This document shows, piece after piece, positions 1 to 18,400 of a stretch of DNA of 64,000 nt. Every line of letters begins with the position of its first letter. The first letter of the stretch is position 1. Below the pieces are notes generated by a model. That model was not told the DNA's origin and ran no database searches. It saw nothing but the letters and a program-made list of their open reading frames with translations. Position numbers and translations under genes: made by a program. This DNA is from Schmidtea polychroa (taxonomy: Eukaryota): NCBI GenBank assembly GCA_044892525.1, contig CM097885.1, forward strand, positions 49,538,001 to 49,602,000, in the 5' to 3' direction.

Positions 1-105
1 AGGATGATTAGGTGCTGATATACGAATATTCATATCTGCTAAAATATATTATAAATTAACATATTATAAAAAACAAAATTTACCAATTCGGTTTCTTTGT
101 ATCAT
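1..105 (-). CDS. Putative spliced Maverick accessory gene running off the left edge (exon 84-105, intron 39-83, exon <1-38; MIQRNRIADMNIRISAPNHP...)
   Basis: 45-nt GT-AG intron keeps the frame open to the window edge; CCAATCAG box at 213-222 upstream. Start codon uncertain. Confidence 0.4.
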
Positions 106-629
106 TCTCTTGATATCTTTTGAAATGTTCTTCATTGTAAGTTTTGTCTAAAAGTGACGAAAAAATGAAAAACATAGAATATATATCACGTTTATTACAA
201 ACTTTATTCACGATCCAATCAGAATCGAGGAATATATACAACACACATACATACTACTGTGTATCATTTACGCACTCACCGTGTAGGTATGTATATCAAC
301 TACTCACCATGTGCATGAATAATGAGATGTCTTTGTCGTTTAACAAAGACACTACGTGACTATTTCAAAAAGGTAAAACATGACTAGTCATTGTAAATAA
401 CTTGCACATTAATTGCAAATAATAATAATAAGAATATTTATAAATAATAATAATAATAAATTAAAATAAATTTAATTATCAAAATTGTTCATTAATAAGA
501 CGACATTTTTACAATAACATGTATTAAACAAAATTATACATATAATAATAATAATAATATTAATAATAATATTAATAATAACAATCACAACAACAAAGGA
601 AATGATACATTTATTAAACATCAAATTTA

Positions 630-1097
630 TTAAACATCAAATTTTTTGTACAATAACCAAGCTAAACAATGTTGACCACATGTTTGGGTCAATGGATTTT
701 GAAACATAGTTTTATTATACACAATAGGTTTTCCCATTGTTTGTAGTTTTGATATCAACAAAGCTGGGTAATAAAAACCCATAGGATCGAACACGAATAT
801 ATTACCAGGTTTCACGTATATAGCTATCCAATGTTCTCCACCAAGATGAGACGATTGAGTATTGACGATTATTGCTTGATTATTGCTCAAATATGGAATT
901 TTATCAAGAGGAAAAACTCCAACAAATTCATTTCCCAATATCTGTTTTCCGATTTTATTGACCTGAACAGAACTTCTTAAATAAATCCAGAGTATAAAAA
1001 ACAACTTACTCCATGACAACTTTTTGTGTTTCTGTTTACATTTATACCAACACAGTTCTATTTGCAGTAATTTGAACTTCATTTTCAAATACTCCAT
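630..1097 (-). CDS. Adenain-like cysteine maturation protease (Polinton PRO); true start uncertain
   Basis: FVGVFPLDKIP, GEHWIA (His), FDPMG (Asp), FQNPLTQTCGQHC (Gln/Cys) motifs; adjacent to MCP. Confidence 0.88.
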   Translation of the reverse strand: MEYLKMKFKLLQIELCWYKCKQKHKKLSWSKLFFILWIYLRSSVQVNKIGKQILGNEFVGVFPLDKIPYLSNNQAIIVNTQSSHLGGEHWIAIYVKPGNIFVFDPMGFYYPALLISKLQTMGKPIVYNKTMFQNPLTQTCGQHCLAWLLYKKFDV

Positions 1098-2265
1098 ATA
1101 TTATAACATGTACTGGTTCAGTAATAGCTTTTGCAAACTTTATATCCAGTCGTAAATTTCCATTTTGAGGTAATTGACTTTGATTTAAATCAAAATCAGG
1201 GGCTAAAACAAATGTAAAAAATGGGTATTTGCTTTTAAAATCTTCTAGAGTTATTCCGCAATTCAAATTTTTATCTAAATAACCCAGATTTCTAACAATA
1301 CTCTGCATATATGTTGCACAGTAATTGTCATTCTCGAAATCTTGAATATATGTTTCTCTATAATCAGTATTTTTCGACAAAGTCAATGATGTAACACCAA
1401 AGTTTTTGAAAATTGAGCTGGACGCAGTATATGATCCATTATATTGTGCTTCACTTTGAAATGTTATCAGAATAAAATTAGGCATTCTTCTGTCACCAAA
1501 TATTTGTTCTTTATAGAATGATGAAGCACCTTTAGCAATAGCAAATTGTACAATTTCCTTTGTTTTTAATGGATAAATTGCATGTTTTGAATTAAGACCT
1601 AATTGATGACCTGCTAATACTGAGGGGTCTACTCGTACTCTTCTCACCAATAATTTTGCATCAACTAATTGACATATTGGTGTAGTAGTTGCACTAGTAA
1701 GAGATAATGCAGAATCAGACCTTTTCAGTCTAATATGTACATTAACTCCCGGTAGTAAATATTTTGGTTGATCCATAAAATCAAGTTGTAATGATGAGCA
1801 CATGGTGTAAACCTTTGAGCCTTTAACCCACTTTTTTCTTTCATCATCTGCTGCTGCATAACCCATAGGAGTAAGGCATGTATTTTTAGTATCGGAATTG
1901 TAATTTAAAATAGTTTCTATTAATGCCTTGTGAATGAATGTATTATTTCCGCCCTCAATCTTGATATTATTAAATCCCAACACTGCATCTTTAAACAGAG
2001 TATGAAACAGGAAATTGTTCGGTATTACATCTGCATTGGCATCCAAAACTTTTCTATCTTTATCTACAACCTTAATCTGAACAGTCAATAAAGTATCGTT
2101 CAAATCTAAATATTCAGTTTGCGAACCATTAATATAAAACTCGATATCATTTCTACTATCTGTAATTGAATTCATAGGAAAAACTTCCTCAAATGCCCCA
2201 AATTCTATTACAGCCTGGGGCGACGGTCTCTCAAATATACATAATTCAGATTTACCACAAATCAT
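1042..2265 (-). CDS. Major capsid protein (double jelly-roll; Polinton PY/hexon-like)
   Basis: 407-aa intact ORF with typical N-terminus SELCIFE..PQ..IEFYING..EYLDLNDTLL; located between core gene and protease. Confidence 0.85.
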   Translation of the reverse strand: MICGKSELCIFERPSPQAVIEFGAFEEVFPMNSITDSRNDIEFYINGSQTEYLDLNDTLLTVQIKVVDKDRKVLDANADVIPNNFLFHTLFKDAVLGFNNIKIEGGNNTFIHKALIETILNYNSDTKNTCLTPMGYAAADDERKKWVKGSKVYTMCSSLQLDFMDQPKYLLPGVNVHIRLKRSDSALSLTSATTTPICQLVDAKLLVRRVRVDPSVLAGHQLGLNSKHAIYPLKTKEIVQFAIAKGASSFYKEQIFGDRRMPNFILITFQSEAQYNGSYTASSSIFKNFGVTSLTLSKNTDYRETYIQDFENDNYCATYMQSIVRNLGYLDKNLNCGITLEDFKSKYPFFTFVLAPDFDLNQSQLPQNGNLRLDIKFAKAITEPVHVIIYGVFENEVQITANRTVLV

Positions 2266-2630
2266 TTTGCAAATATAGTTCCATGTCCTTTCATTCGTTT
2301 GTTTATACGTGATATTCCATGTCTTTTACGTTTTGGAACAGGAGCTGGAGCTGGAGATTTTTCTTTTTGAAACATACCTGCAACCCCTGGTAAAACTTTC
2401 CCTAATTCAGCTAAAGCATTTGTTTTTAGAGATGGTAATATTTTCTGTTCATTCATAATAACGTCTTTTGCAGTTTTCATACCAAAACTACCAATACGTT
2501 TAAGAATAGGCAATGCAAATCTACCAATTGTTCTCAACCATCCCGATCCGTACTGTTTACCAATAAAATATGGTAATTCGCCACCAGATTGGCTACCACT
2601 ATACATACTAATAATATCAGAATTTGCCAT
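2262..2630 (-). CDS. Small basic virion core/cement-like protein
   Basis: QSGG and QYGSGWLRTIGRFALPILK motifs, C-terminal KRKRH basic patch; ATGA overlap with MCP start. Confidence 0.6.
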   Translation of the reverse strand: MANSDIISMYSGSQSGGELPYFIGKQYGSGWLRTIGRFALPILKRIGSFGMKTAKDVIMNEQKILPSLKTNALAELGKVLPGVAGMFQKEKSPAPAPVPKRKRHGISRINKRMKGHGTIFAK

Positions 2631-3690
2631 CTACTTTACGAAAATGTAATGTCAAATGAGTTTTTGAACCTTTTGGAAAGTTTATAAGTTTTCCACTATC
2701 ATCACGAATATTTATTTCTATATTGTTTATACATGAACTTGCTATTGGTAAATACATGGGATTATCGATATTTATATTGACAACTTCATCATGTTCATAT
2801 TTGCCAATCCATACCGATTTCAAAAGAGGAACACTGGAATCACCAACAATTATGGGTTCGATAATGTTAGTATATATGAACATTTGTTGATGATGTTCTA
2901 GTATTCTTGGTTTGCGTATACCAGTCGATTTTTCTCGATATTTTTGCTTATCTAATCCAAGTGAATTTGCCAAATTTTTATCAAATGTAACTTCGCAAAT
3001 ATCATCATTCAAACTGAAGGTAAACATCAAATCTTTCACAATTTCCAAATTTTTAAATATGTGTGAACAATTGAACTTTAAATATTTAAGTAAATTATCA
3101 AGTTTATCAAAATATAATTCATCAGCAAAGGTAAATGATTCTTCAACTTCATCATTATACGACACAGATATTTTGATTTCTTCTTTCATTACACTGTTTG
3201 CTTCAAATAGATTAAAACGTAATAAATACTCGGTCTCCGTAACAATATTTTTCAACTTATTGCAACCCATTCGTTTGGCATCTTCAATAGTTTCGAATGT
3301 TATTGTAAATGGTTTAAAATCACAACTGATATTTAATCCATCCTTGTAAAACATATAGCAATGCGAATCTAATATTTGATTCGGAATATGATATGTTTTA
3401 TCATAATTACTGATAACAAAGATACCGCTACATGTTTTCACAATATTCCTTTTGAAATCAATCTTACATTGACTATAAAATGGGAATGTGTTGTACACGA
3501 ATGTAAAATCTTGCAGTGCAACTTCCCAATCCCCATTTAAAGAAATCGGATTCTGGAGATTGACCATGAATTTACTGGCTTGATTGTCTGGATGAATTAA
3601 TGGGCAACTATTGCTCGGCAAAATAGTATAAAAATTCACTTTACTAGGTCTTTTGCTGATATCCATGACGGGTTTTGATAACCATGCCAT
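2617..3690 (-). CDS. Minor capsid protein (penton, Polinton PX-like); start probably near 3639-3666
   Basis: NFYTILPSN N-terminal motif, W.VAL..F, C-terminal FIYTNIIEPIIVGDS.VPLL and THLTLHFRK motifs. Confidence 0.8.
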   Translation of the reverse strand: MAWLSKPVMDISKRPSKVNFYTILPSNSCPLIHPDNQASKFMVNLQNPISLNGDWEVALQDFTFVYNTFPFYSQCKIDFKRNIVKTCSGIFVISNYDKTYHIPNQILDSHCYMFYKDGLNISCDFKPFTITFETIEDAKRMGCNKLKNIVTETEYLLRFNLFEANSVMKEEIKISVSYNDEVEESFTFADELYFDKLDNLLKYLKFNCSHIFKNLEIVKDLMFTFSLNDDICEVTFDKNLANSLGLDKQKYREKSTGIRKPRILEHHQQMFIYTNIIEPIIVGDSSVPLLKSVWIGKYEHDEVVNINIDNPMYLPIASSCINNIEINIRDDSGKLINFPKGSKTHLTLHFRKVDGKF

Positions 3691-4811
3691 TTGACATAGT
3701 ATTGTTTATCCTTACCGACCTTTTTAGTTTTCAATATTTTTTGAATTCTAAATACTTTTGGGGGAGGAATGACTTGTAATTCCTGCTCATAAAATTTCCC
3801 CTGTACAATATTATTATCATTGTCTTTGATGACATACATTACAGGATTCTGTTTAGTATTTATTTTTGAAATTACAAAGACTTCATCACTCCAATTTGTA
3901 TCAAAATTTTTAATAAATGGTGATGCACTAATTTTACTAATTCTAACATGGTCACCGACTTTATATTTAGGTTTTGCAATTTTTACAGATTTCTTAGAAG
4001 TCAATGATGTTTTTGATGTAATATCAACCGGTCTCAATCCATTCAGTCCTCGATGTGATGAATGATTATAACTTGTTATTATTTTCGGTAAAGCATTTAC
4101 CCATTTTTTATTACCTTGATGCACGAACAATTTCTTTAATCTATCTCTCAATGTTCGATTAAATCTTTCAACATGGGCAGCTTTGTATTGAGAATGTACC
4201 GAGTAGTGATTTATTTTCAGTTTATCGAGGATTTGCTTAACTTTGCTATTGNNNNNNNNNNNNNNNNNNNNNNNNNNNNNNNNNNNNNNNNNNNNNNNNN
4301 NNNNNNNNNNNNNNNNNNNNNNNNNNNNNNNNNNNNNNNNNNNNNNNNNNNNNNNNNNNNNNNNNNNNNNNNNNNNNNNNNNNNNNNNNNNNNNNNNNNN
4401 NNNNNNNNNNNNNNNNNNNNNNNNNNNNNNNNNNNNNNNNNTATTAGGATGTCCATCTTTAAATAAAATATTAATTGCCTTGGACATTTCTTCTGCAGAT
4501 TTTGCCTTGACTGGTATTGCTCGTGCAAACCTGCTGTATACATTAATACATGTTAAAATATATTTATTCCCATTGTTAATTTTCGAATAAGGTATCATCT
4601 CCATCAAATCCATTTGCCATAAATCGTCAATACCGAATGTTTTATACGCTCTTGTTGGAAATCTTTTCCGCATTGGTTTGTTCAAACTGTACGCAAGCTG
4701 ATCTGATAACCACTTCTGGGTTTCTTTTTTCGAATTCGGAACTCTTTTGTTTAATTTTGCCACTCCACCGAAACCGGCTTCGTCTTCTGGGTTCGTCCAA
4801 ATCTTCTCCAT
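3636..4811 (-). CDS. Retroviral-like (rve) integrase with C-terminal chromodomain; interrupted by N gap 4252-4441
   Basis: LWQMDL, YILTCINVYSRFA, AAHVERFNRTL; YKVGDHVRIS; chromodomain IQKIL...YYVKWHGY..PSWI. Likely start ATG at 4811 (MEKIW). Confidence 0.92.
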   Translation of the reverse strand: MEKIWTNPEDEAGFGGVAKLNKRVPNSKKETQKWLSDQLAYSLNKPMRKRFPTRAYKTFGIDDLWQMDLMEMIPYSKINNGNKYILTCINVYSRFARAIPVKAKSAEEMSKAINILFKDGHPNXXXXXXXXXXXXXXXXXXXXXXXXXXXXXXXXXXXXXXXXXXXXXXXXXXXXXXXXXXXXXXXXNSKVKQILDKLKINHYSVHSQYKAAHVERFNRTLRDRLKKLFVHQGNKKWVNALPKIITSYNHSSHRGLNGLRPVDITSKTSLTSKKSVKIAKPKYKVGDHVRISKISASPFIKNFDTNWSDEVFVISKINTKQNPVMYVIKDNDNNIVQGKFYEQELQVIPPPKVFRIQKILKTKKVGKDKQYYVKWHGYQNPSWISAKDLVK

Positions 4812-4872
4812 TACAACAAGAAGATTTAAAATTAAATTTAATGTCGGGCAATGAAGGATTAGCACCCATTGT

Positions 4873-5406
4873 TTATGTTTGATTTCCTACAACTCCACCT
4901 AATAAGGATAATGCCAGAGGTATTAATGCACCAATAAATCCACCTTGTTGTTTATATATAATTTTCCTCATTTGCTTACGATTTTTATTATTTACTAAAG
5001 ATAATAATGGTTTCCTATGTTTGCTCAATAAATGCTTTTTTGATTTACTGATTTTAATTTTGCCTTTGACTACTTTAAGTATAATATTAAGTAAATCATC
5101 GACAACAAAATTTGGGAATGATTGCAATATATTCATTCTTTTCATACTCGGGGCCTTTAACAATGCATTAAAAAATGGAAAACTGCGATGATTTTTAACT
5201 ACTTTTTTACTAGTTTTACGGGTTTTACGGGTTTTACGTTTAGGTTTAGGATTTTTAGAAATAAGATTCATTGCAGAGAAATTTTCAGTTACAAGTTTTT
5301 TAGATGGTGTATAACTAGTTGTTGGTGGAACTATTGGAACTTTAATAGTCTTTCTAATACCTTTTCTTAATTTCTTAATATTTTTCACCCTTGCTTTTAG
5401 AAACAT
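4873..5406 (-). CDS. Lys-rich basic protein with C-terminal QQGGFIGALIPLALSLLGG segment (conserved Polinton-type virion protein, function inferred)
   Basis: 177-aa intact ORF between integrase and ATPase; very basic N-half, GG motif followed by hydrophobic/amphipathic tail. Confidence 0.6.
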   Translation of the reverse strand: MFLKARVKNIKKLRKGIRKTIKVPIVPPTTSYTPSKKLVTENFSAMNLISKNPKPKRKTRKTRKTSKKVVKNHRSFPFFNALLKAPSMKRMNILQSFPNFVVDDLLNIILKVVKGKIKISKSKKHLLSKHRKPLLSLVNNKNRKQMRKIIYKQQGGFIGALIPLALSLLGGVVGNQT

Positions 5407-5427
5407 TATTATTATTCGTAGAGGTTT

Positions 5428-6054
5428 TCAACTTTGTTTATAAACCATGGCACCTTTTGGGTTGAAAATATCTGTTTTTACACGTAAATCATCGGGACAT
5501 TGTTGTGTGAAATCAAGAAATATATATCCATGAGGTATTTTTGTAGCATTTTGAAATGCACTGATAAGAAATTTACGATTGTTAGGGTATGCTTGACGTG
5601 CAAGAAAATCAATCACTGTTGCATCTCTAGGATTCTTGAAAATAACTAAATATTGTACATTTAAATTACGTGTTCGATGTGCCCCACCTTGATGAAATAG
5701 ATTTTGTGTTATGAAAATAACTGTTACACCGACATGTCTGCTGATCTTTGTAAATAAATTATTAAAATCTTTTTCTTTATTAGCTTCTTGATACAAATCA
5801 TCGATAATAATGACATCACCTTTCTTTAATCGGCTGGACCAGTTTTTATCGAATCCCTTTACTATTTTCATGTTTTTTAATTTACAGAAACTTGATTGAG
5901 TTAATCCATGTTCTTCATCAGCACCCCTATGCCAATAAATCCTGTTGAATTTTGATTTGAATAAATTTGATTTTAGTAATTTACAAACAAATAATGTTTT
6001 TCCACTACCACTCGGACCAACGATTTGGTATACTGCATCATTTCTTAATTCCAT
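5428..6054 (-). CDS. DNA packaging ATPase (A32/FtsK-HerA family)
   Basis: Walker A GPSGSGKT, Walker B IIIDD, SRH motif, IFITQN motif. Confidence 0.92.
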   Translation of the reverse strand: MELRNDAVYQIVGPSGSGKTLFVCKLLKSNLFKSKFNRIYWHRGADEEHGLTQSSFCKLKNMKIVKGFDKNWSSRLKKGDVIIIDDLYQEANKEKDFNNLFTKISRHVGVTVIFITQNLFHQGGAHRTRNLNVQYLVIFKNPRDATVIDFLARQAYPNNRKFLISAFQNATKIPHGYIFLDFTQQCPDDLRVKTDIFNPKGAMVYKQS

Positions 6055-6153
6055 TTCAAAAATTTTATATATGTATATTTGTTTATATTCAATGATTTAA
6101 TGAACTCGTGCTCAATTTGTATATAAAGACTAATTTTCATAAATGATTTAATA

Positions 6154-6591
6154 ATGTTAGCAAATATAAATTATCGAGGAAATTTTGATGTATCGAATAT
6201 GAGGTTCCCACCAGGGAAACCCCAGCAAATTATCGATAGAAGCGGGAAATATCCGATAATATTTTTCAAGACTGGTAAATGTCGAATCATGGGATGTAAG
6301 AAACCTTTGGATATTAATAAATTACAATATCGAATAAATAATATTATAATCCAATCAATTACCGTTACTATGGATATGGGACATAGTATCAATCTATATA
6401 ATATGTCGAAAAAATGTGATTGTATGTTTGAACCGGAATTGTTTCCGGCACTAAGACTATTAAAATATAACCCTATATGTGTCAATGTGTTTGCTAGTGG
6501 AAAGGTTGTCATGCTTGGGTTGAGAAATTTGGAGTATAGAGAATTTGTTGACAATGTTCGAAATGAGATAATTTCATTGGTTGATTTCTAA
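6154..6591 (+). CDS. TATA-binding protein (TBP)-like protein, element-encoded
   Basis: Both TBP half-repeats recognisable: IIFFKTGKCRIMG (cf. LIFSSGKMVCTG); IQSITVTMDMGHSINL, FEPELFPAL and VNVFASGKVVMLG (cf. IQNMVGSCD, YEPELFPGL, LIFVSGKVVLTG). Confidence 0.85.
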   Translation: MLANINYRGNFDVSNMRFPPGKPQQIIDRSGKYPIIFFKTGKCRIMGCKKPLDINKLQYRINNIIIQSITVTMDMGHSINLYNMSKKCDCMFEPELFPALRLLKYNPICVNVFASGKVVMLGLRNLEYREFVDNVRNEIISLVDF

Positions 6592-6672
6592 TTGGTTAAT
6601 TTCTTATTGGTTATTGATTGATTTAAACAAACTGTTTATTGTTTAGAAATCATTTATTCAAAAAAAAAAAAA

Positions 6673-7080
6673 ATGTACAAAATTCCAAGTGCAGCTCGTT
6701 TAATTAAAGAAATAGATGATTATGGTAAATTTTTTATTTTTTGTTTACAAATTTAAATATTATATTTTTCAGAAGAATATGCTGCAGTCATGCTAAAGAA
6801 GTTAGCATTCTATTATCCAGAAATCAATGCAGCAGTATACAACAAGCCTGCAGAATTAATCCCCGATTTGGTGTTCAATGCGACGGGGATATGGATGTTC
6901 GAAATTTTCCATCAATTTATGTGGGATGTGAAGATAAATCGAACAATTAAACATATGGATCCAGAATATTTATGTTACAATAGCTGTTCCTGCTGCAAAG
7001 CTAGATATCAGCGATATGTAGAATGGGTTTTGGTTAAAACTCTTCGTGATTTCCACCATATCAAGAACTTTGTGCATTAA
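6673..7080 (+). CDS. Hypothetical spliced accessory protein, 119 aa (exons 6673-6724, 6773-7080), Cys cluster CYNSCSCC
   Basis: 48-nt GT-AG intron 6725-6772 joins MYKIPSAARLIKEIDDY-E in frame to the 6790 ORF. Confidence 0.7.
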
Positions 7081-7414
7081 ATGTTTTTAACAAATAAATG
7101 TTANNNNNNNNNNNNNNNNNNNNNNNNNNNNNNNNNNNNNNNNNNNNNNNNNNNNNNNNNNNNNNNNNNNNNNNNNNNNNNNNNNNNNNNNNNNNNNNNN
7201 NNNNNNNNNNNNNNNNNNNNNNNNNNNNNNNNNNNNNNNNNNNNNNNNNNNNNNNNNNTATAACAAAACATGTAATAATTAAAACATTAATAGTAAAAAA
7301 CATTAATAATAAAACACATAAATAATAAATCTGTAAATAGAACATATAACAAAACATGTGACAATGCAACATCAATGCATTTTGAATGCAATTTAAACAA
7401 AGACATATTGAAAT

Positions 7415-7450
7415 CTGATTGGATGATAGACACGAGTCGAAGGTATAAAA
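7415..7450 (+). promoter_or_regulatory. Reverse CCAAT box (CTGATTGGAT) plus TATA box (TATAAAA 7444-7450)
   Basis: Canonical spacing 35 nt upstream of ATG 7485. Confidence 0.6.
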
Positions 7451-7484
7451 ACCCTGTACCATTTCATTTTAATCATTATTCACG

Positions 7485-7898
7485 ATGACCAAGAAAATTT
7501 CAGGCACCGAAAAACCGAAAGAAGAACTTGTACAACCGGTTCAAATGTTCCACAACTACAAAATGTATTTTTTAAAAGAAGAAATCAATATGAAATTGGT
7601 TGCACCGGTCAAGCTAATTCCAACTCAATTTCAATTTTTATCCGGCACGCTTTCAATGATAGATGTTAAAACTATTGATGATGTTTTCAAACGGTTAAAT
7701 TCAAATCTAGCATGTAATCAACATGCATGGTTCAACAATAGATATGCAAGATTTTATGATTCTTTTGATGAAATCAGTTTCAAAGAAAACGAAAATTGGT
7801 ATATAACAATTGCAATCCAGGGATATAAAGTTGATAATAATGATGTGTATTCTCCTATTTGGAAAATTATGTCTGCTAGACTTTCACAGCTATTTTAA
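7485..7898 (+). CDS. Hypothetical protein, possibly OB-fold ssDNA-binding protein
   Basis: 137-aa intact ORF with own promoter; C-terminal pattern ITIAIQGYKV...SPIWKI resembles viral SSB beta-strands (weak). Confidence 0.55.
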   Translation: MTKKISGTEKPKEELVQPVQMFHNYKMYFLKEEINMKLVAPVKLIPTQFQFLSGTLSMIDVKTIDDVFKRLNSNLACNQHAWFNNRYARFYDSFDEISFKENENWYITIAIQGYKVDNNDVYSPIWKIMSARLSQLF

Positions 7899-8047
7899 TG
7901 TTCTATTTAATGTATTTAATAAATGTATTAGTCATATTTGTTTTTCTCTTTATTAACAAAGAAATTGCAACATTAATGCAAATGACATGCAAATTTAACA
8001 AAGAAAATCTATAAACAAACTTACAATATAGTTTTAAAGTGATAAAA

Positions 8048-8431
8048 ATGACTGCGGAAAAAGGTTAACATGATTAATTAATTAATTACCGAATTATTTG
8101 TTATTATTTAGAATTTGTAATCAACTTTTTGTTGGAAAAATTAGCAGAAATAGCTGGTGTAAAAATTGAGGACATATTATCTGTAACAAATGCATTAAAT
8201 ATCGGCTGGGTAGTTGAGAGTCAAGATTCAGGATTTGATGATCAGGAAGAAGAAACTCAAGAAACTGATACTCAAGAAATTGATGAGGAAATATATGAAC
8301 CCATAGATGAACCTATAGATGAACCTATAGATGAACCTAAAGATACGGAAAATATTACGAATGATTGTATTGATCATGTTGTTGAAAATGTAATGAAATG
8401 TGGAGATGACGATTGTGAATGTGTTAATTAA
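8048..8431 (+). CDS. Acidic spliced accessory protein (exons 8048-8063, 8112-8431) with DEPI repeats and Cys/Asp tail
   Basis: 48-nt intron 8064-8111 gives MTAEKEFVINFLLEK... in frame with the track ORF at 8129. Confidence 0.7.
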
Positions 8432-8500
8432 TAAATTTTAGTTAATTATTTCTTATACTTTCTTATATATTTATTTAAAAAATAAAACAACATAACTATA

Positions 8501-9027
8501 TCAATTTTTATTTAAGAATCTAGAAATTACATAGAAAATAGCGACACCTGTTGAAAATTTAATAAAGTTTTTAAATCTTCTTTTATACTGATCGATTTCC
8601 TTAGCATTTCGGGCGAGTTTTTTCAATGTACCCCATCCGCCATTGGCTTCTATCCATGGAGTAAATTTAGATTTGATTATCTAAAAAATCAATATTATTA
8701 AAATATAGATTATAAAAGTATTACTTCTTGAGACCATTGATAATAGTGTTGTGAGTCCCATGAACTTTTTTCAATTATAATCTTCATATAAGTGAACCCT
8801 ACAATTATTCGGGTCCACTTCATTTCGTCATCGAATAGACAATTGAATATTCTATTGAAGTAGAACTTCTTCGTCTCCAGACACTCCATATCCAGCATGT
8901 TTTGGTAATCAATATGATTCCCCTCGATGATTTCTTCAGTACGATTAATTAGGTAACTGAGGCTTTCCGTAATGCCTGTATTGACGACCTCATTTAACAA
9001 GTTGTCGATAAAATTAGTTTGCGACAT
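8501..9027 (-). CDS. Bcl-2 family protein, 160 aa, spliced (exons 8725-9027, 8501-8680)
   Basis: BH1-like CLFDDEMKWTRIIVGFTY; after 44-nt intron 8681-8724, BH2-like PWIEANGGWGTL and C-terminal anchor FIKFSTGVAIFYVISRFLNKN. Confidence 0.85.
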
Positions 9028-9633
9028 TTCTACAGTAATTTAAAATATGATGTTTTATTTATACTACTACAGAAGTGTGTGCAATATGATTCTGATTGGT
9101 TAATAGACTATAAATGTAAAATATATATGAGTTTTGATTTGATACAACATGAAAACTATATTTCTATTGCTAATTATTATTATTATTATAACGAGTGTGT
9201 GCTCACACAATACAACAATAACAGTGGAGTCTTTTAACAAATCAATATGTGTTTGTCCAAATACCGCCATTAAAATGATTGTAAATTAGGAGCAGTTGTA
9301 GTAATTGTTTGATTATGCACATGGATTGAAGGGTCTTTGTTAATATTGCATTAAAACTGCATTGTCTTTGTTAATATTACTTTCAATTTGTTAACAATAT
9401 TATTACGTTGCGGTAGTTTAGACTATTGAACAACATATTGAATTACCTTTAGAATGATACCTATATTATATAGTTTTTAAAATGTTGAAGGTTTTTGACC
9501 TTTTGAAAGTTAAGGATACATCTTAAACCTTCAAGGGTATGACCATTAGATAGAGCTCTTCAAGACCTTTCGAATGATACCCATGAAGTTTGACATCATT
9601 TGACCCTTTTTAAATTTGAATTTAAAATTGAAA

Positions 9634-9882
9634 TGAGTCACCCTTAATGTGTCATGCGCGATGACTCATTAGGATGAGTCATGTGTGGTGAGTCACCCGG
9701 ATGAGTCACCAGTATGAGTCATCAGATGAGTCATGTGTGATGAGTCACCAGGATGAGTCACCAGGATGATGAGTCATCGATGACGTCATTTATGACTCAC
9801 CGGGGGTGGGGGGTGGGGTATGAGTCATGTTCTTTGTTATGAGTCATCGATGAGTCATATGTCTTTGTTCAACGATGAGTCA
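9634..9882. promoter_or_regulatory. Array of 15 perfect AP-1 heptamers (TGA(G/C)TCA), one CRE (TGACGTCA 9781-9788) and a G-tract (9802-9818) in the element's terminal region
   Basis: Sites start at 9634, 9662, 9675, 9689, 9702, 9715, 9727, 9741, 9754, 9770, 9793, 9821, 9840, 9851, 9876. Confidence 0.8.
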
Positions 9883-10909
9883 TGCAGCGCACTTGTACCT
9901 ACTAACGAGATATATTTCGATACTGCATAATATCATTAGTCATTATTTTTTCGGATTCCTTCTATTTCTCTTTATATGCCATATAATTTATTTCAAATAT
10001 TTTTAAATAACCACAAAAATAACAAAATGTATATATTATTATAACAACCTTTTCGTAAAAAAAATTTTTAAATTAATGAAAGTTTAATGTTGTGTTTAAA
10101 ATAACATAAAATGTAAGATTTTTTAACCTTTACAAAATTTTTAATTTTCATAGAGTAATTGCTGACTATAAACATATTACTTTATTCTAGTTTCGTAAAT
10201 TTAAGATCCTGATATACAAATGTAGAAAAGAAAACATACAAATTATTTTAATAACTAAACTACACATTGGTCGAAAGTGGCCATTAAAGTCCATTAGAGT
10301 CCACGAAAATTTTAAAAAATTTTTTATTTATAAATATTTTTTCCATTAATTTTGCTAAAAAGCTACATTTTATATGACGGAGTTCAGTAAAAATATATAT
10401 GCAATTTTGTCCATAAATTTTGTTTCGAATAACTTGTTTATGTTTAAATTTGAATATTTTTCTTTTAATTTGATATATATTTTCCGAAAAAACCTTAAAA
10501 CAAATCATTTGCTAATTCATCATTAAATATATTTTCATTTTAATTTCTATTGTAAATTGTTATTTCAATTTCCCTTTACAGTCGTCTCAAGTTGCAGATC
10601 TCGCGTTGAAATCTCCACTTGTAGAATGATTTATTTCATTCTCATTCTACTGCAATAATGAGCAATAGTTAATTAAACAAAAATTTTCTTTTATTTTTAT
10701 TGTGCTCAGAAAATGAGATTATATATAATATATAATATTTACTAAAAAATTGACTATGAATCAATAAAGATATCGATGTTTTTTGAAATTCACGAATTTT
10801 CAGCACAGCCTTTTTCAATTGATGTTTTCAAGTAATGATGAATAAAATTCATAGTTAATTTTTTAATAACTAAAATGTCAAATGAAAAGAAATCAAAGGT
10901 GAAAATTAA

Positions 10910-11990
10910 AAGAACTTGATGGTATTGCTAAAGGTTCCAAATTGGATCCAACAATGACATTTATTTTCAATGTCAAGTTTAGAAAAGAAAATTTCATCAA
11001 ACAATTTAACTAAACCAACTGTTCTAAAGGTATTGTTGATGATATTTTTTAGTGTTTGAGAATCGTCAGCATGTTTAGAAAAGAAAATTTCATCAAACAA
11101 TTTAACTAAACCAACTGTTCTAAAAGTATTGTTGATGATATTTTTTTAGTGTTTGAGAATCGTCAGCATGTAAGGCGTTTCTTAGATTCTATGATTTGCA
11201 TTTGTACATGTGAAGAACAAAAAAATGTCTATGATACCGTTTTTGAATTTGTTTATCCACCTGAAGGAAAAATACTATCAGATTGAAATATATAGAAAAG
11301 TGACTGATACTGGTCTTTATACTATTCCTGAGAGCTTTTATCAATTCAGTGAAAAGTATTGATTCTCTGGTTGTGTTGCTTCTTAAAAATGGATATTCTA
11401 AATCTTTTCTTGACGCATGACAAAAGAAACAGTTGATAAATGGATGTTGAACACTCATGATCCTTTCATGATCCTGTTGATGTTAAAGTTAATATGTTGT
11501 TAAGTTCGGAAGGTGAAAAAATTTGATCTATGCACACTGATCAAAAATCATGTTGGTATTATCTTATTCTGAAGATTTCACAAAATTCAAATGTACGATC
11601 CTTAAACATGTAGATAAGACTATATTTCGGGATGTTTCAACGTTTTGCAAGGTTAATAGCAAGTTCACCAATAAGTCTCTAACTCCAGTTTGTCTCTGTT
11701 CAGAACTCGTGAAGCAATTTTCATGGAATGGGTGTAATGTCACATACATTGGAGAGACTGCCCGTCATCTCTGCACTCGAGTTCTTGAGCATCGCCGACA
11801 GAATTGATTGATTCACATTAGTAATCATTTTAGGAAGTGTACCAGTAAAATAATAAGTATTTCTAATTGTAAGATCTTGTCAAAGAGTTTGAGTAATTGA
11901 TGGGAACGAGTATCGTGCGAGGTGTTGCTGATTAGATCTTTAAATACTATAATTAATATTCAAAGTGTTTATGAAATTTTTAAATTTAAA
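10910..11990 (+). mobile_element. Degenerate Penelope-like retroelement (RT fragment plus GIY-YIG endonuclease), with internal ~120-bp tandem duplication
   Basis: Degenerate YVDD region duplicated at ~10975-11170; QFSWNGCNVTYIGETARHLCTRVLEH GIY-YIG motif at ~11710-11800. Confidence 0.75.
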
Positions 11991-12401
11991 TTAAACTAAT
12001 TTTTCACATTAATTAAAAAAAAAATTTTGTATGAGAATGTTAACAATTTTGTGTGTTTTTTAAAATTAAAATTAAAAATTATATGATTAAAAAAATGTTT
12101 TTTTTTAATCATATGTTTTTTTTAAATAAAATTAATCGTTCATAATGTTCAATGACTCTCAAAGGGGTGGTATCGTTATTTATATTTCAAATAATAAATA
12201 TGGTGTATTTAAGAAATTCCTATTACATCCACCAGGCTTTTACAAAGTAGTTAAAACCAAATTGGATTTTTAACGTTGTTGAAATAATTTTCTATGAATA
12301 CATTTTTGTTTTCTTTAAATTTATTTCAAAAGTTATATTAATTTATTAATTTTCAAATTTTCAATATAAATTTGATTGGAACTTATTTGAATGTTATATA
12401 G

Positions 12402-15400: not shown

Positions 15401-18400
15401 TTTAGAATTGCCAGTAATTATATTATAAAAAAACATTCGTTTGCAATTTCATATTTGTTGAGAAAAATATTTGAATAATTTTGATATATGTACACGATCA
15501 AAACTTTCTAATTTTAAATATTTTTTTTCTTTTTAGAAATGAGATTAATTTATATTTTCTATTTATTTTAAGATTGGTTCCTTTTTTATGATCAATTTGT
15601 GTTTGGTCGTTATTGCTAGCCAGTTTTCTGAAACAAAACGCCGAGAAACCGAACGTATGTGGATTGAAAGAAGAAGGTTTAATTCAAGCAATTGCTCCTC
15701 GGTTTCTAAAGACGAACCTCAAACATGTTATTTGGAAATAATCAAATTGATCACTCAAATGATTTGCAAAGTTTATAGACGAATTGTCAAATTATATCAT
15801 CTATTACAAATGCGACAGTCTAAAACTGCTCAAGACAATTATCAAAACACACTCAAAAAGCGTAGGAAACATTGTAGAAAACATTCTCAAAGTCAATTTC
15901 CCATTGATGAACATTGTCATCTTTATTCTATTGTCAATACAATTAGCGGTGATAAACAACACTATTATGCCATAAATAAATATCCTAGTAATTTTTCAAA
16001 TATTCCACCAAAGGCCAGTCCAGAATTATCTGTGATTGATGAACTCAATTCTCCTAGACATCCTAATCATCTTGTTTCTGACATCTCATCAAAATCTGTC
16101 TCTACAGAAACAAAACGAAAATCTCAATATAATTCCCAAATTTTATTAGATATTCCTTCCACCCCAGCTAATCATTCGTCTACTCGAGATAACTATCGGT
16201 GGGAATTAACAAAAAATAATCCTTTATTAACTTCCAAAGATAAAATCTACACTCAATCAGTTGCGAGTAGATCATCGTCTATCAACAGTTGTGCATATCA
16301 AATTCCTCAATTAATAGAAAATTCTAGTCGACATCGTAAACCCTTTGACAAAAAACAAGATAAACCGCAGAGAAAAAGTAATTTGATTAAATTTTCATCA
16401 ACTTGAATTGTGTCTAAAATTTAAATGAATTTTAAAAAATTAATATGTTTTTTAAAATTATTAAATATTTATTTTTAAATTTTAATTTTTCAAATTATCA
16501 GTTGACTCTAAAATTTGGTTTTTTCATAGAATTATTGACAATGTTTATTAAAAATCAAATAATAATACTAAATTGTTTAGTATGAAATTTCCGTTTTAGT
16601 GGTTAAATAAAAAACCTATATATGGCAATTAGAATTTAAGAGTACCTTGACTCAGGGTGTAAGTTATTGGTCAACAAATCTTTCTGATTATGTCAACTAG
16701 GACATTGGGAAAAATTATATTAGTTTTAATCTTTAGCTACTAGAAAAGATCAGAAAATGTCAGACTTAAAAAATTATTTTTTATCAGAGACGAACATCAA
16801 GCAAAGATTTCTAAGGAGAAAAGAAGTGAAATCGCTTAAATTTATTGACAGCGATGAAAATAATTTAGATTTATAGTAATTTTATAAATATTTAGAACAT
16901 AAAGTTATAGAACATTGACTTTCTTCAACCTTCTTCCGCCTAACTCTCACTTTCGATAGATAAAAAAATTATTTACCGCACTAAATCCACATTCGACGAA
17001 ATAAGATATTGGAAAATGATTTTCGAAGCTTTTGAAGCTCCTTTGTTACCAAATGAAATTGAACAGGAAATTATTTATAGTCACAATATTGATGAAAAGT
17101 TAAAATCGATATATTGTCATTACATAATTTTTCTTTGCACTATTTTNNNNNNNNNNNNNNNNNNNNNNNNNNNNNNNNNNNNNNNNNNNNNNNNNNNNNN
17201 NNNNNNNNNNNNNNNNNNNNNNNNNNNNNNNNNNNNNNNNNNNNNNNNNNNNNNNNNNNNNNNNNNNNNNNNNNNNNNNNNNNNNNNNNNNNNNNNNNNN
17301 NNNNNNNNNNNNNNNNNNNNNNNNNNNNNNNNNNNNNNNNNNNTAAGCCTTTTGCTGCAAATAATGTATTTAATGAAAGAATTTTCGACTATACGATAGT
17401 CCTTGTCAATTGACAAGATTGACAAGGACTATCGTATAGTCGAAAATTCTTTCATTAAATACATTATTTGCAGCAAAAGGCTTAAATTATCATTTTATTG
17501 TTTTAAATAATAAATGCTGCNNNNNNNNNNNNNNNNNNNNNNNNNNNNNNNNNNNNNNNNNNNNNNNNNNNNNNNNNNNNNNNNNNNNNNNNNNNNNNNN
17601 NNNNNNNNNNNNNNNNNNNNNNNNNNNNNNNNNNNNNNNNNNNNNNNNNNNNNNNNNNNNNNNNNNNNNNNNNNNNNNNNNNNNNNNNNNNNNNNNNNNN
17701 NNNNNNNNNNNNNNNNNNNNNNNNNNNNNNNNNNNAAAAGCGTTTTTAGTTTACAATAATGGAATTTGTAAATTATCATAAAATATTAGAATATCACTAA
17801 TGAAATATGCATTATTCTAAACAAAATAATAGTTAACAGATGAGTTTTTGTTTTAATATATTAATAGAAAATTATTTCTGTTAAATTATTTATTATTTAT
17901 TAGAGATGAAGAAGTTTTAATCATCATTTAAATTTCTCTCAATGGCATTCATGATTTTAAAATAAAATTTCGAAAAACCTTTAATTATTTTTATTTATTA
18001 TTATTTAAATTTATTATTATTATTAAAAATTATTATTATTTCAAAAATTCTAAAATAATTTAGAAAAGATGTTATATTAGTTTTAAATATTACATTTGTT
18101 TTAATTACTTAATCTAATGATTTTTTAATTTTAAATAAACGAATCGTATAAGTCATTATATATTCTGAATGGTCACGAAGAGGTCATTATATATGCATTG
18201 ATAATAATAAAAAACAAATACTAAATAACTCGGAAAAAGTTAATATCTATTTATATTTGTATAAAAAACTTTAAACGTTAGATAAATTGACATCATTTTA
18301 TAACAGATCATCTGATATTAGAATGATTGCTAATTTATTCCCCAAATATATCTTAATATGGAGACGGAAAGAATGAGCCAGAAATATTAGAAGAGAATGT

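What the first reader, a model, noticed from the sequence alone, without database searches (positions are those of the whole stretch)
1..9903. Intact-looking endogenous Polinton-like virus with its own TBP, a Bcl-2 and a terminal AP-1 array: candidate stress-inducible provirus
Seen: uninterrupted capsid, penton, protease, ATPase and integrase ORFs, plus an accessory arm with a TBP homolog, a Bcl-2 homolog and 15 AP-1 sites. Established: Mavericks encode virion machinery; AP-1 (Jun/Fos) is wound/stress-activated; viral Bcl-2s block apoptosis. Inference: the three parts could form a circuit that senses host stress, redirects transcription and keeps the cell alive during virion production. I do not recall this combination being described for a Maverick, but could not check the literature.
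Basis: partly seen in the sequence, partly recalled or inferred. Interest (0 to 1): 0.9.

Follow-up and report, generated by a model that had tools for sequence, protein, structure and literature searches.

The report
Integrated Maverick virus with AP-1 array
This is one arm of a Maverick/Polinton-type virus integrated in an AT-rich eukaryotic genome; its genes look intact, including a short TATA-binding-protein-like gene and a spliced Bcl-2-like gene, and only its end-of-element array of 15 perfect AP-1 sites is unusual among relatives.

Summary
The observation largely holds. Window 630-9882 carries, without visible stops:
- an adenain-like protease
- a double jelly-roll capsid protein (confirmed by fold)
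- a penton-sized protein (assigned by synteny only)
- an rve/chromodomain integrase, interrupted by an assembly gap
- an A32-type ATPase
- a TBP-like gene and a Bcl-2-like gene
- 15 exact TGA(C/G)TCA heptamers plus one CRE within 250 bp

No protein-primed polymerase (pPolB) and no second terminal repeat lie in the window, so "intact" cannot be claimed.

New here:
- The Bcl-2-like gene has two exons split by a 44-nt GT..AG intron that relatives share. It encodes 160 aa with BH1-like and BH2 motifs and a hydrophobic tail.
- The TBP-like protein has one full TBP repeat and a truncated one.
- It is a standard gene of a large clade: 108 protein clusters, and all 11 long relatives carry it.
- TBP and Bcl-2 genes sit side by side in another lineage (L007-L009).

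Starrett et al. 2021 already noted Bcl2 homologs in adintoviruses and a TBP gene in related viruses. None of 78 relatives' loci has an AP-1 array. The array encloses clade-specific motifs, so it belongs to the element.

The stress-sensing circuit is plausible but untested. Verdict: a new member of a known kind, of moderate interest.

The parts
1..629 (.). AT-rich non-coding stretch left of the protease gene; probably still inside the element, as the spacer before the unseen polymerase gene
   Evidence: No ORF and no pPolB trace. Relatives have about 500 nt between the protease-side gene and the convergent pPolB gene. One exact copy of the clade motif TTAACAAAGA lies at 340-349. Membership is inferred.
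630..1097 (-). Adenain-like cysteine protease, 155 aa
   Evidence: Pfam Peptidase_C5, 26.8 bits against cutoff 21.3. His and Cys contexts are present. tblastn finds homologs in 42 relatives' loci.
1042..2265 (-). Double jelly-roll major capsid protein, 407 aa
   Evidence: 172 relatives found. AF2 pLDDT 88.5, pTM 0.87. Foldseek PDB E 1e-16 to 1e-12 against SGIV, PBCV-1 Vp54 and mavirus capsid proteins. Best BFVD match is a Cotesia bracovirus protein at E 2e-26.
2262..2630 (-). Small basic protein, 122 aa, conserved between the penton-like and capsid genes
   Evidence: 53-55% identical to the same-position ORFs of L007 and L010. Found in 60 of 78 loci. No Pfam hit.
2617..3690 (-). Penton-sized protein, 357 aa (minor capsid candidate)
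   Evidence: Conserved position upstream of the capsid gene. 31-36% identical to L007 (three tandem paralogs) and L010. No Pfam or PDB sequence hit. The fold was not tested.
3636..4865 (-). rve integrase with C-terminal chromodomain; one gene crossed by the assembly gap 4252-4441
   Evidence: N piece: rve, 24.5 bits. C piece: Chromo 22.6 bits and rve_3 17.3 bits. 68-73% identical to relatives' 341-359-aa integrases on both sides of the gap. Frame and catalytic centre are not verifiable.
4873..5406 (-). Very basic protein, 177 aa (44 K+R), hydrophobic Gly-rich C-terminus
   Evidence: C-terminal 107 aa are 50-54% identical to the same-position ORFs of L007 and L010. Composition. No Pfam hit.
5428..6054 (-). 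A32/FtsK-type packaging ATPase, 208 aa
   Evidence: Pfam Pox_A32, 30.7 bits against 22.8. Walker A and B present. 74-75% identical to relatives.
6154..6591 (+). TBP-like protein, 145 aa: truncated N-terminal repeat plus one full TBP repeat
   Evidence: Pfam TBP, 55.1 bits. The C-terminal half alone scores 44.5 bits; the N-terminal 60 aa score 13.1 bits, matching profile positions 49-73 only. The family profile hits PDB TBPs at E 4e-20 through positions 55-145 only. 108 related clusters.
6790..7080 (+). ORF of 96 aa, no known relatives
   Evidence: Followed by the assembly gap 7104-7258.
7485..7898 (+). Conserved accessory ORF, 137 aa, function unknown
   Evidence: Weak homologs in L007 (104 aa), L010 (193 and 163 aa) and 10 loci in all. 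AACAAAGA motif 89 nt upstream.
8129..8431 (+). Acidic ORF, 100 aa (33 D+E) with a short tandem peptide repeat
   Evidence: No relatives found. Two AACAAAGA motifs lie upstream.
8501..9027 (-). Bcl-2-like gene of two exons (9027-8725 and 8680-8501) with a 44-nt GT..AG intron (8724-8681); 160 aa
   Evidence: Exon 1: PF00452, 22.3 bits, profile positions 6-67. Exon 2: 12 bits, profile positions 86-100. L068 and L069 share the donor, the acceptor and the conserved second exon, with introns of 38 and 44 nt. The joined exons have no stop, a BH1-like motif, a BH2 motif and a hydrophobic tail, and align to L007's Bcl-2 at E 8e-9.
9149..9289 (+). Small ORF, 46 aa, hydrophobic N-terminus
   Evidence: 26 residues are 96% identical to the gene next to the Bcl-2-like gene in L067, where the product is at least 101 aa. 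Why the lengths differ was not determined.
9634..9882 (.). Array of 15 AP-1/TRE heptamers plus one CRE octamer (9781-9788), a G-run (9802-9818) and two AACAAAGA-type motifs; subterminal region of the element
   Evidence: GC is 0.47 against 0.29 and 0.22 in the flanks. The sequence is unique within the window.

Best explanation
Shown:
- Window 1-9.9 kb is one arm of a Maverick/Polinton-type dsDNA virus genome integrated in an AT-rich eukaryotic chromosome.
- It belongs to a large, scarcely described clade. Complete members are 12.6-16 kb linear genomes with inverted terminal repeats, a protein-primed polymerase and the same core gene order. All of them carry a short TBP-like gene.
- The Bcl-2-like gene contains a spliceosomal intron, so the accessory arm must be expressed in the nucleus by host RNA polymerase II and the host splicing machinery.

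Inferred:
- The 250-bp block of 15 ATGA(C/G)TCAY sites plus one CRE at the outer end is a binding platform for host bZIP factors of the AP-1/ATF type.
- It works as a terminal enhancer for the neighbouring accessory ('early-like') genes, and possibly also helps the replication origin. This would tie their expression to host signalling.
- The tail-anchored Bcl-2-like protein would then delay apoptosis.
- The TBP-like protein would change promoter use in favour of the element's genes.
- A second motif, AACAAAGA, is shared by the clade. It lies upstream of the accessory genes in the sense direction and is the likelier clade-wide promoter or enhancer element. The AP-1 sites look like an addition private to this lineage.
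For: Identity and clade: (60-nt terminal repeats at both ends of L010).

Nuclear expression: relatives share the intron.

Array:
- 15 heptamers, where local composition predicts 0.03.
- 14 of 15 have A at -1 and all have a pyrimidine at +1, while the spacers vary in length (4-21 nt) and sequence. The core is therefore kept better than a plain tandem duplication would explain.
- The only TGACGTCA of the 64 kb sits inside the array with the same flanks. That fits selection for bZIP binding.

The array belongs to the element:
- It encloses the window's only G-run and two AACAAAGA-type motifs.
- Relatives L002 and L004 have C-runs directly next to AACAAAGA arrays.
- Relatives also carry other short tandem arrays near their ends.

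AACAAAGA is 8-fold enriched in the element and oriented with the downstream accessory genes.
Against: - No expression, binding or chromatin data exist here.
- The host is unidentified, so the presence of Jun/Fos-type factors is assumed.
- None of the 78 relatives' loci has an AP-1 array, so no conservation supports a function.
- The array is 600 nt from the Bcl-2-like start codon, with a small opposite-strand ORF in between.
- The array's 13/27/52-nt periodicity shows that part of it is recent tandem duplication.
- The TBP-like protein lacks most of one repeat, so TATA-box binding like cellular TBP is not assured.
- The polymerase, the second end and the integrase catalytic centre are unseen, so the element may be incomplete.
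Confidence: 0.5

Rival explanations
1. The array is a cis-element of the virus itself: a subterminal repeat used for genome packaging, origin function or terminal-repeat structure, and read by a virus-encoded protein. Its match to the AP-1 consensus is incidental.
For: - Relatives carry short tandem arrays of quite different units near their ends: L007 105-147, L010 12412-12522, L003 11408-12249, L002 2469-2634, L004 19249-19343. That pattern suits a fast-evolving cis-element matched to a virus protein.
- The array shows tandem periodicity.
- From my own knowledge, adenoviruses place repeated packaging motifs and host-factor sites at one genome end.
Against: - The conserved core is the exact 9-bp bZIP optimum in 14 of 15 copies, while the spacers drift.
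- A CRE variant with one extra central base is tolerated inside the array. bZIP dimers accept that change, but a sequence-specific viral protein need not.
- Pfam found no DNA-binding candidate among the accessory ORFs.
Confidence: 0.25
2. The locus is an incomplete or decaying insertion: a young fragment without a polymerase, or with an inactive integrase. Its open reading frames reflect recent arrival, not function, and the array has no present role.
For: - No pPolB trace in 1-700 and no second terminal repeat in the window.
- The integrase stretch that holds the second catalytic Asp in relatives falls in the gap.
- The small ORF 9149-9289 is much shorter than its counterpart in L067.
- The surroundings are rich in transposons.
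Against: - All eight core genes seen are full length compared with relatives and have 0 stops.
- Near-identical proteins occur on other contigs: the TBP-like protein at 100% identity, the capsid protein at 98-99.5%. That indicates a recently active lineage.
- The distance from the protease gene to the window edge fits the spacer seen in relatives.
Confidence: 0.2
3. The AP-1 array is host DNA or another repeat that merely abuts the insertion, such as a host enhancer or satellite at the integration site.
For: - The exact right boundary of the element could not be fixed, because no second end or second copy is available.
- No relative has such an array.
Against: - The array encloses the window's only G-run and two AACAAAGA-type motifs. 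Both recur together in relatives' end regions.
- GC is 0.47 against 0.22 in the host flank.
- No other copy of the array exists in the 64 kb.
Confidence: 0.05

Closest known systems
Maverick/Polinton elements (Polintoviricetes-type integrating dsDNA viruses)
   Same: rve integrase, A32-type ATPase, adenain-like protease, double jelly-roll capsid protein and a penton-sized protein in one block. Relatives have a protein-primed PolB and terminal inverted repeats. The best annotated viral fold match of the capsid model is a protein in Cotesia sesamiae bracovirus. From my own knowledge, a Maverick insertion has been described in that virus.
   Different: The polymerase, the second repeat and the target-site duplication are not visible in this window. 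A short TBP-like gene is present across the whole clade. This member also has a spliced Bcl-2-like gene and an AP-1 site array.
Adintoviruses / MELD viruses (Starrett et al. 2021, PMC8502044; Buck et al. preprint 10.1101/2024.03.25.586562)
   Same: An adenovirus-like virion module plus an rve integrase with a C-terminal chromodomain. Accessory genes copied from hosts: Bcl2 and IAP homologs are reported, and TBP and TRAF are labelled in the maps of related MELD viruses. Relative L004 carries a TRAF-type MATH gene next to its TBP gene.
   Different: Pfam finds no OTU domain in the relatives' PolB. BLASTP-level likeness of the capsid protein to adintovirus hexons was not tested. No relatives were found in IMG/VR. 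Those papers do not mention a terminal AP-1 array.
Adenoviruses (own knowledge, not tested here)
   Same: A linear genome replicated by a protein-primed polymerase, an adenain protease, a Bcl-2-like anti-apoptotic early protein, and host transcription-factor sites plus repeated motifs packed at a genome end next to early genes.
   Different: Adenoviruses have no integrase and no TBP-like gene. The capsid protein here is much smaller (407 aa) and no sequence-level similarity was found.
African swine fever virus and giant viruses with TBP-like and Bcl-2-like genes (own knowledge, not tested here)
   Same: One virus genome encodes both a TBP-like factor and a Bcl-2 family member.
   Different: Those viruses bring their own RNA polymerase and replicate largely in the cytoplasm. 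This element has no polymerase genes for transcription, and its intron shows that it depends on the nucleus.

Membership tests
Maverick/Polinton | [quoted passage not shown] | tested here: not met
   Absent from window 1-9903 and from 1-700 in particular. Present in relatives (L007: PF03175, 113 bits), where it lies beyond the protease side. In this window that side is outside the sequence given, so absence from the element is not shown.
Maverick/Polinton | Retroviral-type (rve) integrase | tested here: met
   rve 24.5 bits, rve_3 17.3 bits and Chromo 22.6 bits on the two pieces, each below Pfam's cutoff. The pieces give 187 and 302 bits to relatives' integrases, which carry precomputed rve hits. 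Continuity across the gap is unknown.
Maverick/Polinton | Double jelly-roll major capsid protein | tested here: met
Maverick/Polinton | Single jelly-roll penton (minor capsid) protein | tested here: inconclusive
   The 357-aa protein is in the right place and of the right size, but has no Pfam or PDB sequence hit.
Maverick/Polinton | A32/FtsK-type packaging ATPase and adenain-like protease | tested here: met
   Both score above Pfam's cutoffs. Motifs are present.
Maverick/Polinton | Terminal inverted repeats and target-site duplication | not testable with these tools
   At most one end lies in the window, and there is no inverted partner. Relative L010 has 60-nt terminal repeats.
Polinton-like virus in the strict sense (the finding's label) | Lacks both rve integrase and protein-primed PolB | tested here: not met
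   An rve integrase is present, and relatives have pPolB.
Adintovirus (definition quoted) | PolB with N-terminal OTU-like domain | tested here: not met
   Pfam finds no OTU domain in the PolB of relatives L007, L010 and L003. The window's own PolB is unseen, and a remote OTU-like fold is not excluded.
Adintovirus (definition quoted) | Integrase with C-terminal chromodomain | tested here: met
   Chromo 22.6 bits at residues 168-200 of the C piece, just under the cutoff of 25.1. Also flagged in L003 and L007.
Adintovirus (definition quoted) | Hexon recognisable by BLASTP against reference adintoviruses | not tested
   No reference sequence was available through the tools. BFVD gave only fold-level matches to 'MELD virus sp.' and 'Adintovirus sp.' proteins.
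TATA-binding protein family (PF00352) | Two tandem TBP repeats forming the DNA-binding saddle | tested here: inconclusive
   The C-terminal repeat is complete (44.5 bits). The N-terminal 60 aa match only profile positions 49-73 of 85, at 13 bits. The family profile matches PDB TBPs only through positions 55-145. Family membership is met (55.1 bits). A full saddle is not shown.
Bcl-2 family (PF00452) | BH1 and BH2 regions in a helical bundle, usually with a C-terminal membrane anchor | tested here: inconclusive
   Exon 1 scores 22.3 bits and exon 2 scores 12.0 bits, each below the cutoff of 31.4. The joined exons contain a BH1-like motif, a BH2 motif and a hydrophobic tail, and align to L007's Bcl-2 (40.2 bits in Pfam) at E 8e-9. 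Weak PDB hits are almost all Bcl-2 family members. The AF2 model of exon 1 alone was poor (pLDDT 55) and its fold search was not significant. Profile-profile probability is 44%.
AP-1/TRE-driven enhancer | Clustered TGA(C/G)TCA sites bound by Jun/Fos-type bZIP dimers | tested here: inconclusive
   The sequence criterion is met: 15 sites plus one CRE. Binding, host factors and enhancer activity cannot be tested with these tools.

The most novel reading that the evidence does not exclude
A clade of Maverick-type viruses carries its own cut-down TBP and places arrays of host transcription-factor sites at its genome ends. The sites are AACAAAGA-type in some members, CCAAT-like in another and AP-1/CRE here. 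In this member the AP-1 array would make expression of a spliced anti-apoptotic gene and the TBP-like factor depend on host Jun/Fos-type signalling. That would be a built-in sensor deciding when an endogenous virus is expressed.
Probability: 0.2. Interest if true: 0.75.

Novelty: new member of a known kind. Interest (0 to 1): 0.45.

Why it matters
Mavericks are widespread endogenous viruses of eukaryotes, and little is known about what controls their expression. This locus gives three concrete handles that public expression and chromatin data can check:
- a predicted splice junction in a viral Bcl-2-like gene
- a clade-wide TBP-like gene with only one full repeat
- a block of 15 consensus bZIP sites at the element's end

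The survey also shows that the TBP-like gene is a regular gene of a large clade (more than 100 protein clusters from many assemblies), not a curiosity of one element. In the searched literature that clade appears only as a label in a figure legend. If the array does couple expression to host signalling, it would be a simple natural example of an endogenous DNA virus reading a host pathway.

Tried and rejected
- **Second terminal repeat:** none found within 1-12000.
- **pPolB in window 1-700:** permissive tblastn with the C-termini of five relatives' polymerases gave only noise, and all three forward frames close within 5 codons.
- **AP-1-like triplets in IMG/VR:** 54 hits, all single or period-36 repeats in unrelated contigs. 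Judged irrelevant.
- **Relatives of the capsid protein in IMG/VR:** none.
- **Rfam and tRNA scans of the whole window:** nothing.
- **Host identification:** exact look-ups of window proteins found only one match, the TBP-like protein P0241, identical on unnamed ENA contigs. The assembly accession GCA_031406105 is in no paper searched. The host stays unidentified.
- **Bcl-2-like ORF against 1.8 billion representatives:** only its own cluster was found.
- **AF2 on the exon-1 ORF with 4 sequences:** pLDDT 55, and the fold search was not significant. In hindsight the model lacked the second exon.
- **PDB sequence searches:** the capsid and penton-like profiles found nothing useful.
- **LxCxE-type motifs in the accessory ORFs:** none.
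- **First literature search:** wasted through a badly set term count.

Full report
**Anatomy**

On the minus strand, from 6054 down to 630, lies a tight block of eight open reading frames:
- an A32-type ATPase (Pox_A32, 30.7 bits; Walker A and B present)
- a very basic 177-aa protein
- an integrase
- a 357-aa protein
- a basic 122-aa protein
- a 407-aa protein
- an adenain-like protease (Peptidase_C5, 26.8 bits)

The 407-aa protein has no Pfam or PDB sequence match. An AlphaFold model built on 37 relatives is confident (pLDDT 88.5, pTM 0.87). It matches double jelly-roll capsid proteins of an iridovirus, PBCV-1 and mavirus at E 1e-16 to 1e-12. In the viral library its best match is an uncharacterised protein of Cotesia sesamiae bracovirus (25% identity, E 2e-26), followed by adomavirus, MELD-virus, virophage and giant-virus capsid proteins.

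The 357-aa protein is called a penton only from its size and position. None of the visible core genes has a stop or a frameshift.

**The two gaps**

The integrase ORF as listed runs through the Ns at 4252-4441. I searched its pieces apart.
- The N piece gives rve at 24.5 bits. The C piece gives Chromo at 22.6 bits and rve_3 at 17.3 bits.
- Relatives' complete integrases (341 and 359 aa) align right up to both edges of the gap, at 68-73% identity, and leave only 11-12 residues without a counterpart.
- The unread stretch is therefore probably far shorter than the 190 Ns written.
- In those two relatives the unmatched stretch holds the motif with the second catalytic Asp (only a yes/no was printed and no letters were read into the gap).
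- Continuity, frame and catalytic integrity of this integrase therefore cannot be judged.

The second gap (7104-7258) lies after the stop of a 96-aa ORF and before a conserved 137-aa ORF. Its content is unknown.

**Relatives and the shape of the whole element**

The capsid protein has 172 relatives and the TBP-like protein 108. All come from unnamed ENA, Logan, JGI and a few NCBI assemblies.

Contigs of 12.6-16 kb show the full plan:
- an accessory arm
- then ATPase, small ORFs, rve/chromodomain integrase, one to three penton-sized genes, a small gene and the capsid gene (tblastn also finds a protease homolog in most long relatives)
- then, on the opposite strand, a protein-primed PolB of 1073-1250 aa

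L010 has 60-nt inverted repeats at its exact ends, so it is a complete linear genome. In the window's orientation the polymerase would lie to the left of the protease gene, about 500 nt away in relatives. The window ends 630 nt after the protease gene and shows no polymerase trace. There is no inverted partner for the right end.

The element may therefore simply continue beyond the window, or it may be truncated. This cannot be told from the window. Proteins identical or 98-99.5% identical to the window's occur on other short contigs, so the lineage is young.

The rest of the window is ordinary eukaryotic repeat-rich DNA: hAT transposase ORFs, a zinc-knuckle ORF and an ion-channel exon. I could not identify the host.

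**The TBP-like gene**

The 145-aa product passes Pfam's TBP cutoff (55.1 against 22.9 bits). A profile of 38 family members hits archaeal and eukaryotic TBPs in the PDB at E 4e-20.

All those matches use only profile positions 55-145, which align to either repeat of TBP. The first 60 residues alone match just the last third of a TBP repeat, at 13 bits. The protein is therefore one full repeat preceded by a cut-down one. Whether it forms a saddle, alone or as a dimer, is open.

The gene is present in all 11 relatives' loci of 12 kb or more that carry the core. It is a standard gene of the clade.

**The Bcl-2-like gene**

The 105-aa ORF alone is weak evidence:
- Pfam 22.3 bits against a cutoff of 31.4
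- PDB E 0.04 to Bcl-2 A1
- only its own cluster among 1.8 billion representatives
- a poor AF2 model

Just before its stop codon there is a GT, and 44 nt further on (89% A+T) an AG. After that comes an open frame whose start matches the last 15 positions of the Bcl-2 profile.

Two relatives from other samples (70-72% protein identity) share the donor, the acceptor and the conserved downstream coding sequence. The intervening stretch differs in sequence and length, 38 and 44 nt. Because relatives share the intron, I joined the two exons as they stand.

The joined product has 160 aa and no internal stop. It has a BH1-like motif, a BH2 motif and a hydrophobic C-terminal tail. It aligns to the intron-less Bcl-2 gene of L007 (Pfam 40.2 bits) over BH1-BH2 at E 8e-9. 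I regard Bcl-2 family membership as likely.

The intron also shows that this arm is expressed through the host's nuclear splicing machinery.

**The AP-1 array**

There are exactly 15 TGA(C/G)TCA heptamers between 9634 and 9882, and four in the other 54 kb.
- Fourteen have A before the heptamer, and all have C or T after it.
- The spacers are 4-21 nt long and of varied sequence.
- The only TGACGTCA of the window lies in the array with the same flanks.
- Tandem Repeats Finder sees periods of 13, 27 and 52 nt, so part of the array arose by duplication. The core is nevertheless kept better than the spacers.

None of 78 relatives' loci has even four such sites within 300 bp.

The array is nevertheless part of the element. 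It encloses the only G-run of the window (9802-9818) and two copies of an AACAAAGA-type motif. In relatives L002 and L004 a C-run lies directly beside tandem arrays of that same motif.

That motif is 8-fold enriched in the element (0.91 against 0.11 per kb). It lies almost only between ORFs and points toward the next accessory gene. In L001 three copies sit just upstream of the TBP gene. Other relatives have different short arrays near their ends.

**How it most likely works**

Shown:
- an integrated Maverick-type genome arm with open virion, packaging and integration genes
- an accessory arm that needs nuclear transcription and splicing

Inferred:
- The clade-wide AACAAAGA motif marks promoters or enhancers of the accessory genes.
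- In this lineage a block of bZIP sites was added at the end and acts as an enhancer, perhaps also as an aid to the origin. Expression of the adjacent genes would then follow host AP-1/ATF activity.
- The tail-anchored Bcl-2-like protein delays cell death.
- The TBP-like protein shifts promoter use.

I put about 0.5 on this composite. Identity of the element is about 0.9, the array as a host bZIP platform about 0.45, and the full three-part circuit about 0.2.

Rivals:
- The array is a cis-element of the virus itself, for packaging or the origin (0.25).
- The locus is an incomplete, inert insertion (0.2; this does not exclude the other readings).
- The array is host DNA that merely abuts the insertion (0.05).

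**What is known**

Starrett et al. 2021 (PMC8502044) state that adintovirus homologs of Bcl2 and IAP were observed. Their figure legends for related MELD viruses list TBP and TRAF genes.
- Relative L004 has a TRAF-type MATH gene beside its TBP gene.
- L007-L009 have Bcl-2 and TBP genes side by side.
- The papers I could search do not describe a TBP-bearing clade, an intron in a Maverick Bcl-2 gene, or AP-1 arrays at Maverick ends.
- That is absence from a limited library, not proof of novelty.

The gene set is therefore known in kind. What is private to this element is the array.

- The host, the left half and the exact right boundary are unknown.
- The penton fold is untested.
- In my reasoning and in three scripts I used short family signatures recalled from memory as search patterns: BH1/BH2, the integrase Asp motif, Walker A and B, protease His/Cys contexts, LxCxE, and the AP-1, CRE and HMG-box consensus sites. 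They are leads, not tool results.
- I also recalled an adenovirus packaging-repeat consensus in my reasoning.
- While reasoning about the N-terminal half of the TBP-like protein I once read the consensus line that the alignment tool printed for A6. The statement above rests instead.
- The only joined sequence I built is the two-exon Bcl-2-like splice model, kept in scratch and not printed.

Noticed in passing
window 342, 7396, 7955, 7997 (+); 9334, 9365, 9831, 9862 (-); L002:2469-2634; L004:19249-19343; L001:5308-5500: The motif AACAAAGA (often TTAACAAAGA) is 8-fold enriched in the element, lies between ORFs and points toward the next accessory gene. In relatives it forms tandem arrays of 6-10 copies with a 17-18 nt period, next to a C-run. 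It is probably a promoter, enhancer or end-region element shared by the clade. From memory, it contains the HMG-box (SOX/TCF) consensus.
   Followed up: partly
window 8681-8724 (- strand): A 44-nt, 89% A+T spliceosomal intron lies inside a gene of the virus-like element, and relatives L068 and L069 share it. This implies a host with very short introns, and it means prokaryote-style gene callers truncate this gene in public collections.
   Followed up: yes
window 9149-9289 (+): A 46-aa ORF with a hydrophobic N-terminus. 26 of its residues are 96% identical to the gene next to the Bcl-2-like gene in L067, far better conserved than the Bcl-2-like gene itself (70%). The L067 product is at least 101 aa, and the reason for the length difference is unknown.
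   Followed up: partly
L007:6353-9377: Relative L007 (also L008 and L009) has three tandem paralogs of the penton-sized gene (332, 345 and 329 aa), where the window and L010 have one.
   Followed up: no
L010:12412-12522; window 9088-9108 and 6576-6613: L010 has a subterminal array of a 32-nt unit (3.4 copies) that contains a CCAAT-like TGATTGG. Similar ATTGGTTAA strings occur in the window after the TBP-like gene (a tandem repeat of 2.5 copies) and upstream of the small ORF.
   Followed up: no
window 29942-32519 and 33890-36585: A 2.6-kb inverted duplication, 96-100% identical, around a 1.4-kb spacer. Each arm carries a 259-aa ORF with a hAT dimerisation domain. It is either a very recent palindromic transposon arrangement or an assembly artefact.
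   Followed up: partly
window 39805-40359 (+) and 61008-61532 (+): A zinc-knuckle (CCHC, 50.5 bits) ORF typical of retroelement Gag, and an ion-transport-domain exon interrupted by an N gap. Both are ordinary host or transposon content.
   Followed up: no
window, 10 N runs of 130-242 nt (e.g. 17147-17343, 24367-24608, 61176-61350): N runs are frequent, about one per 6 kb. At the integrase the written length (190) is much longer than the roughly 33-36 nt that collinearity with relatives suggests, so the gap lengths here are unreliable.
   Followed up: partly
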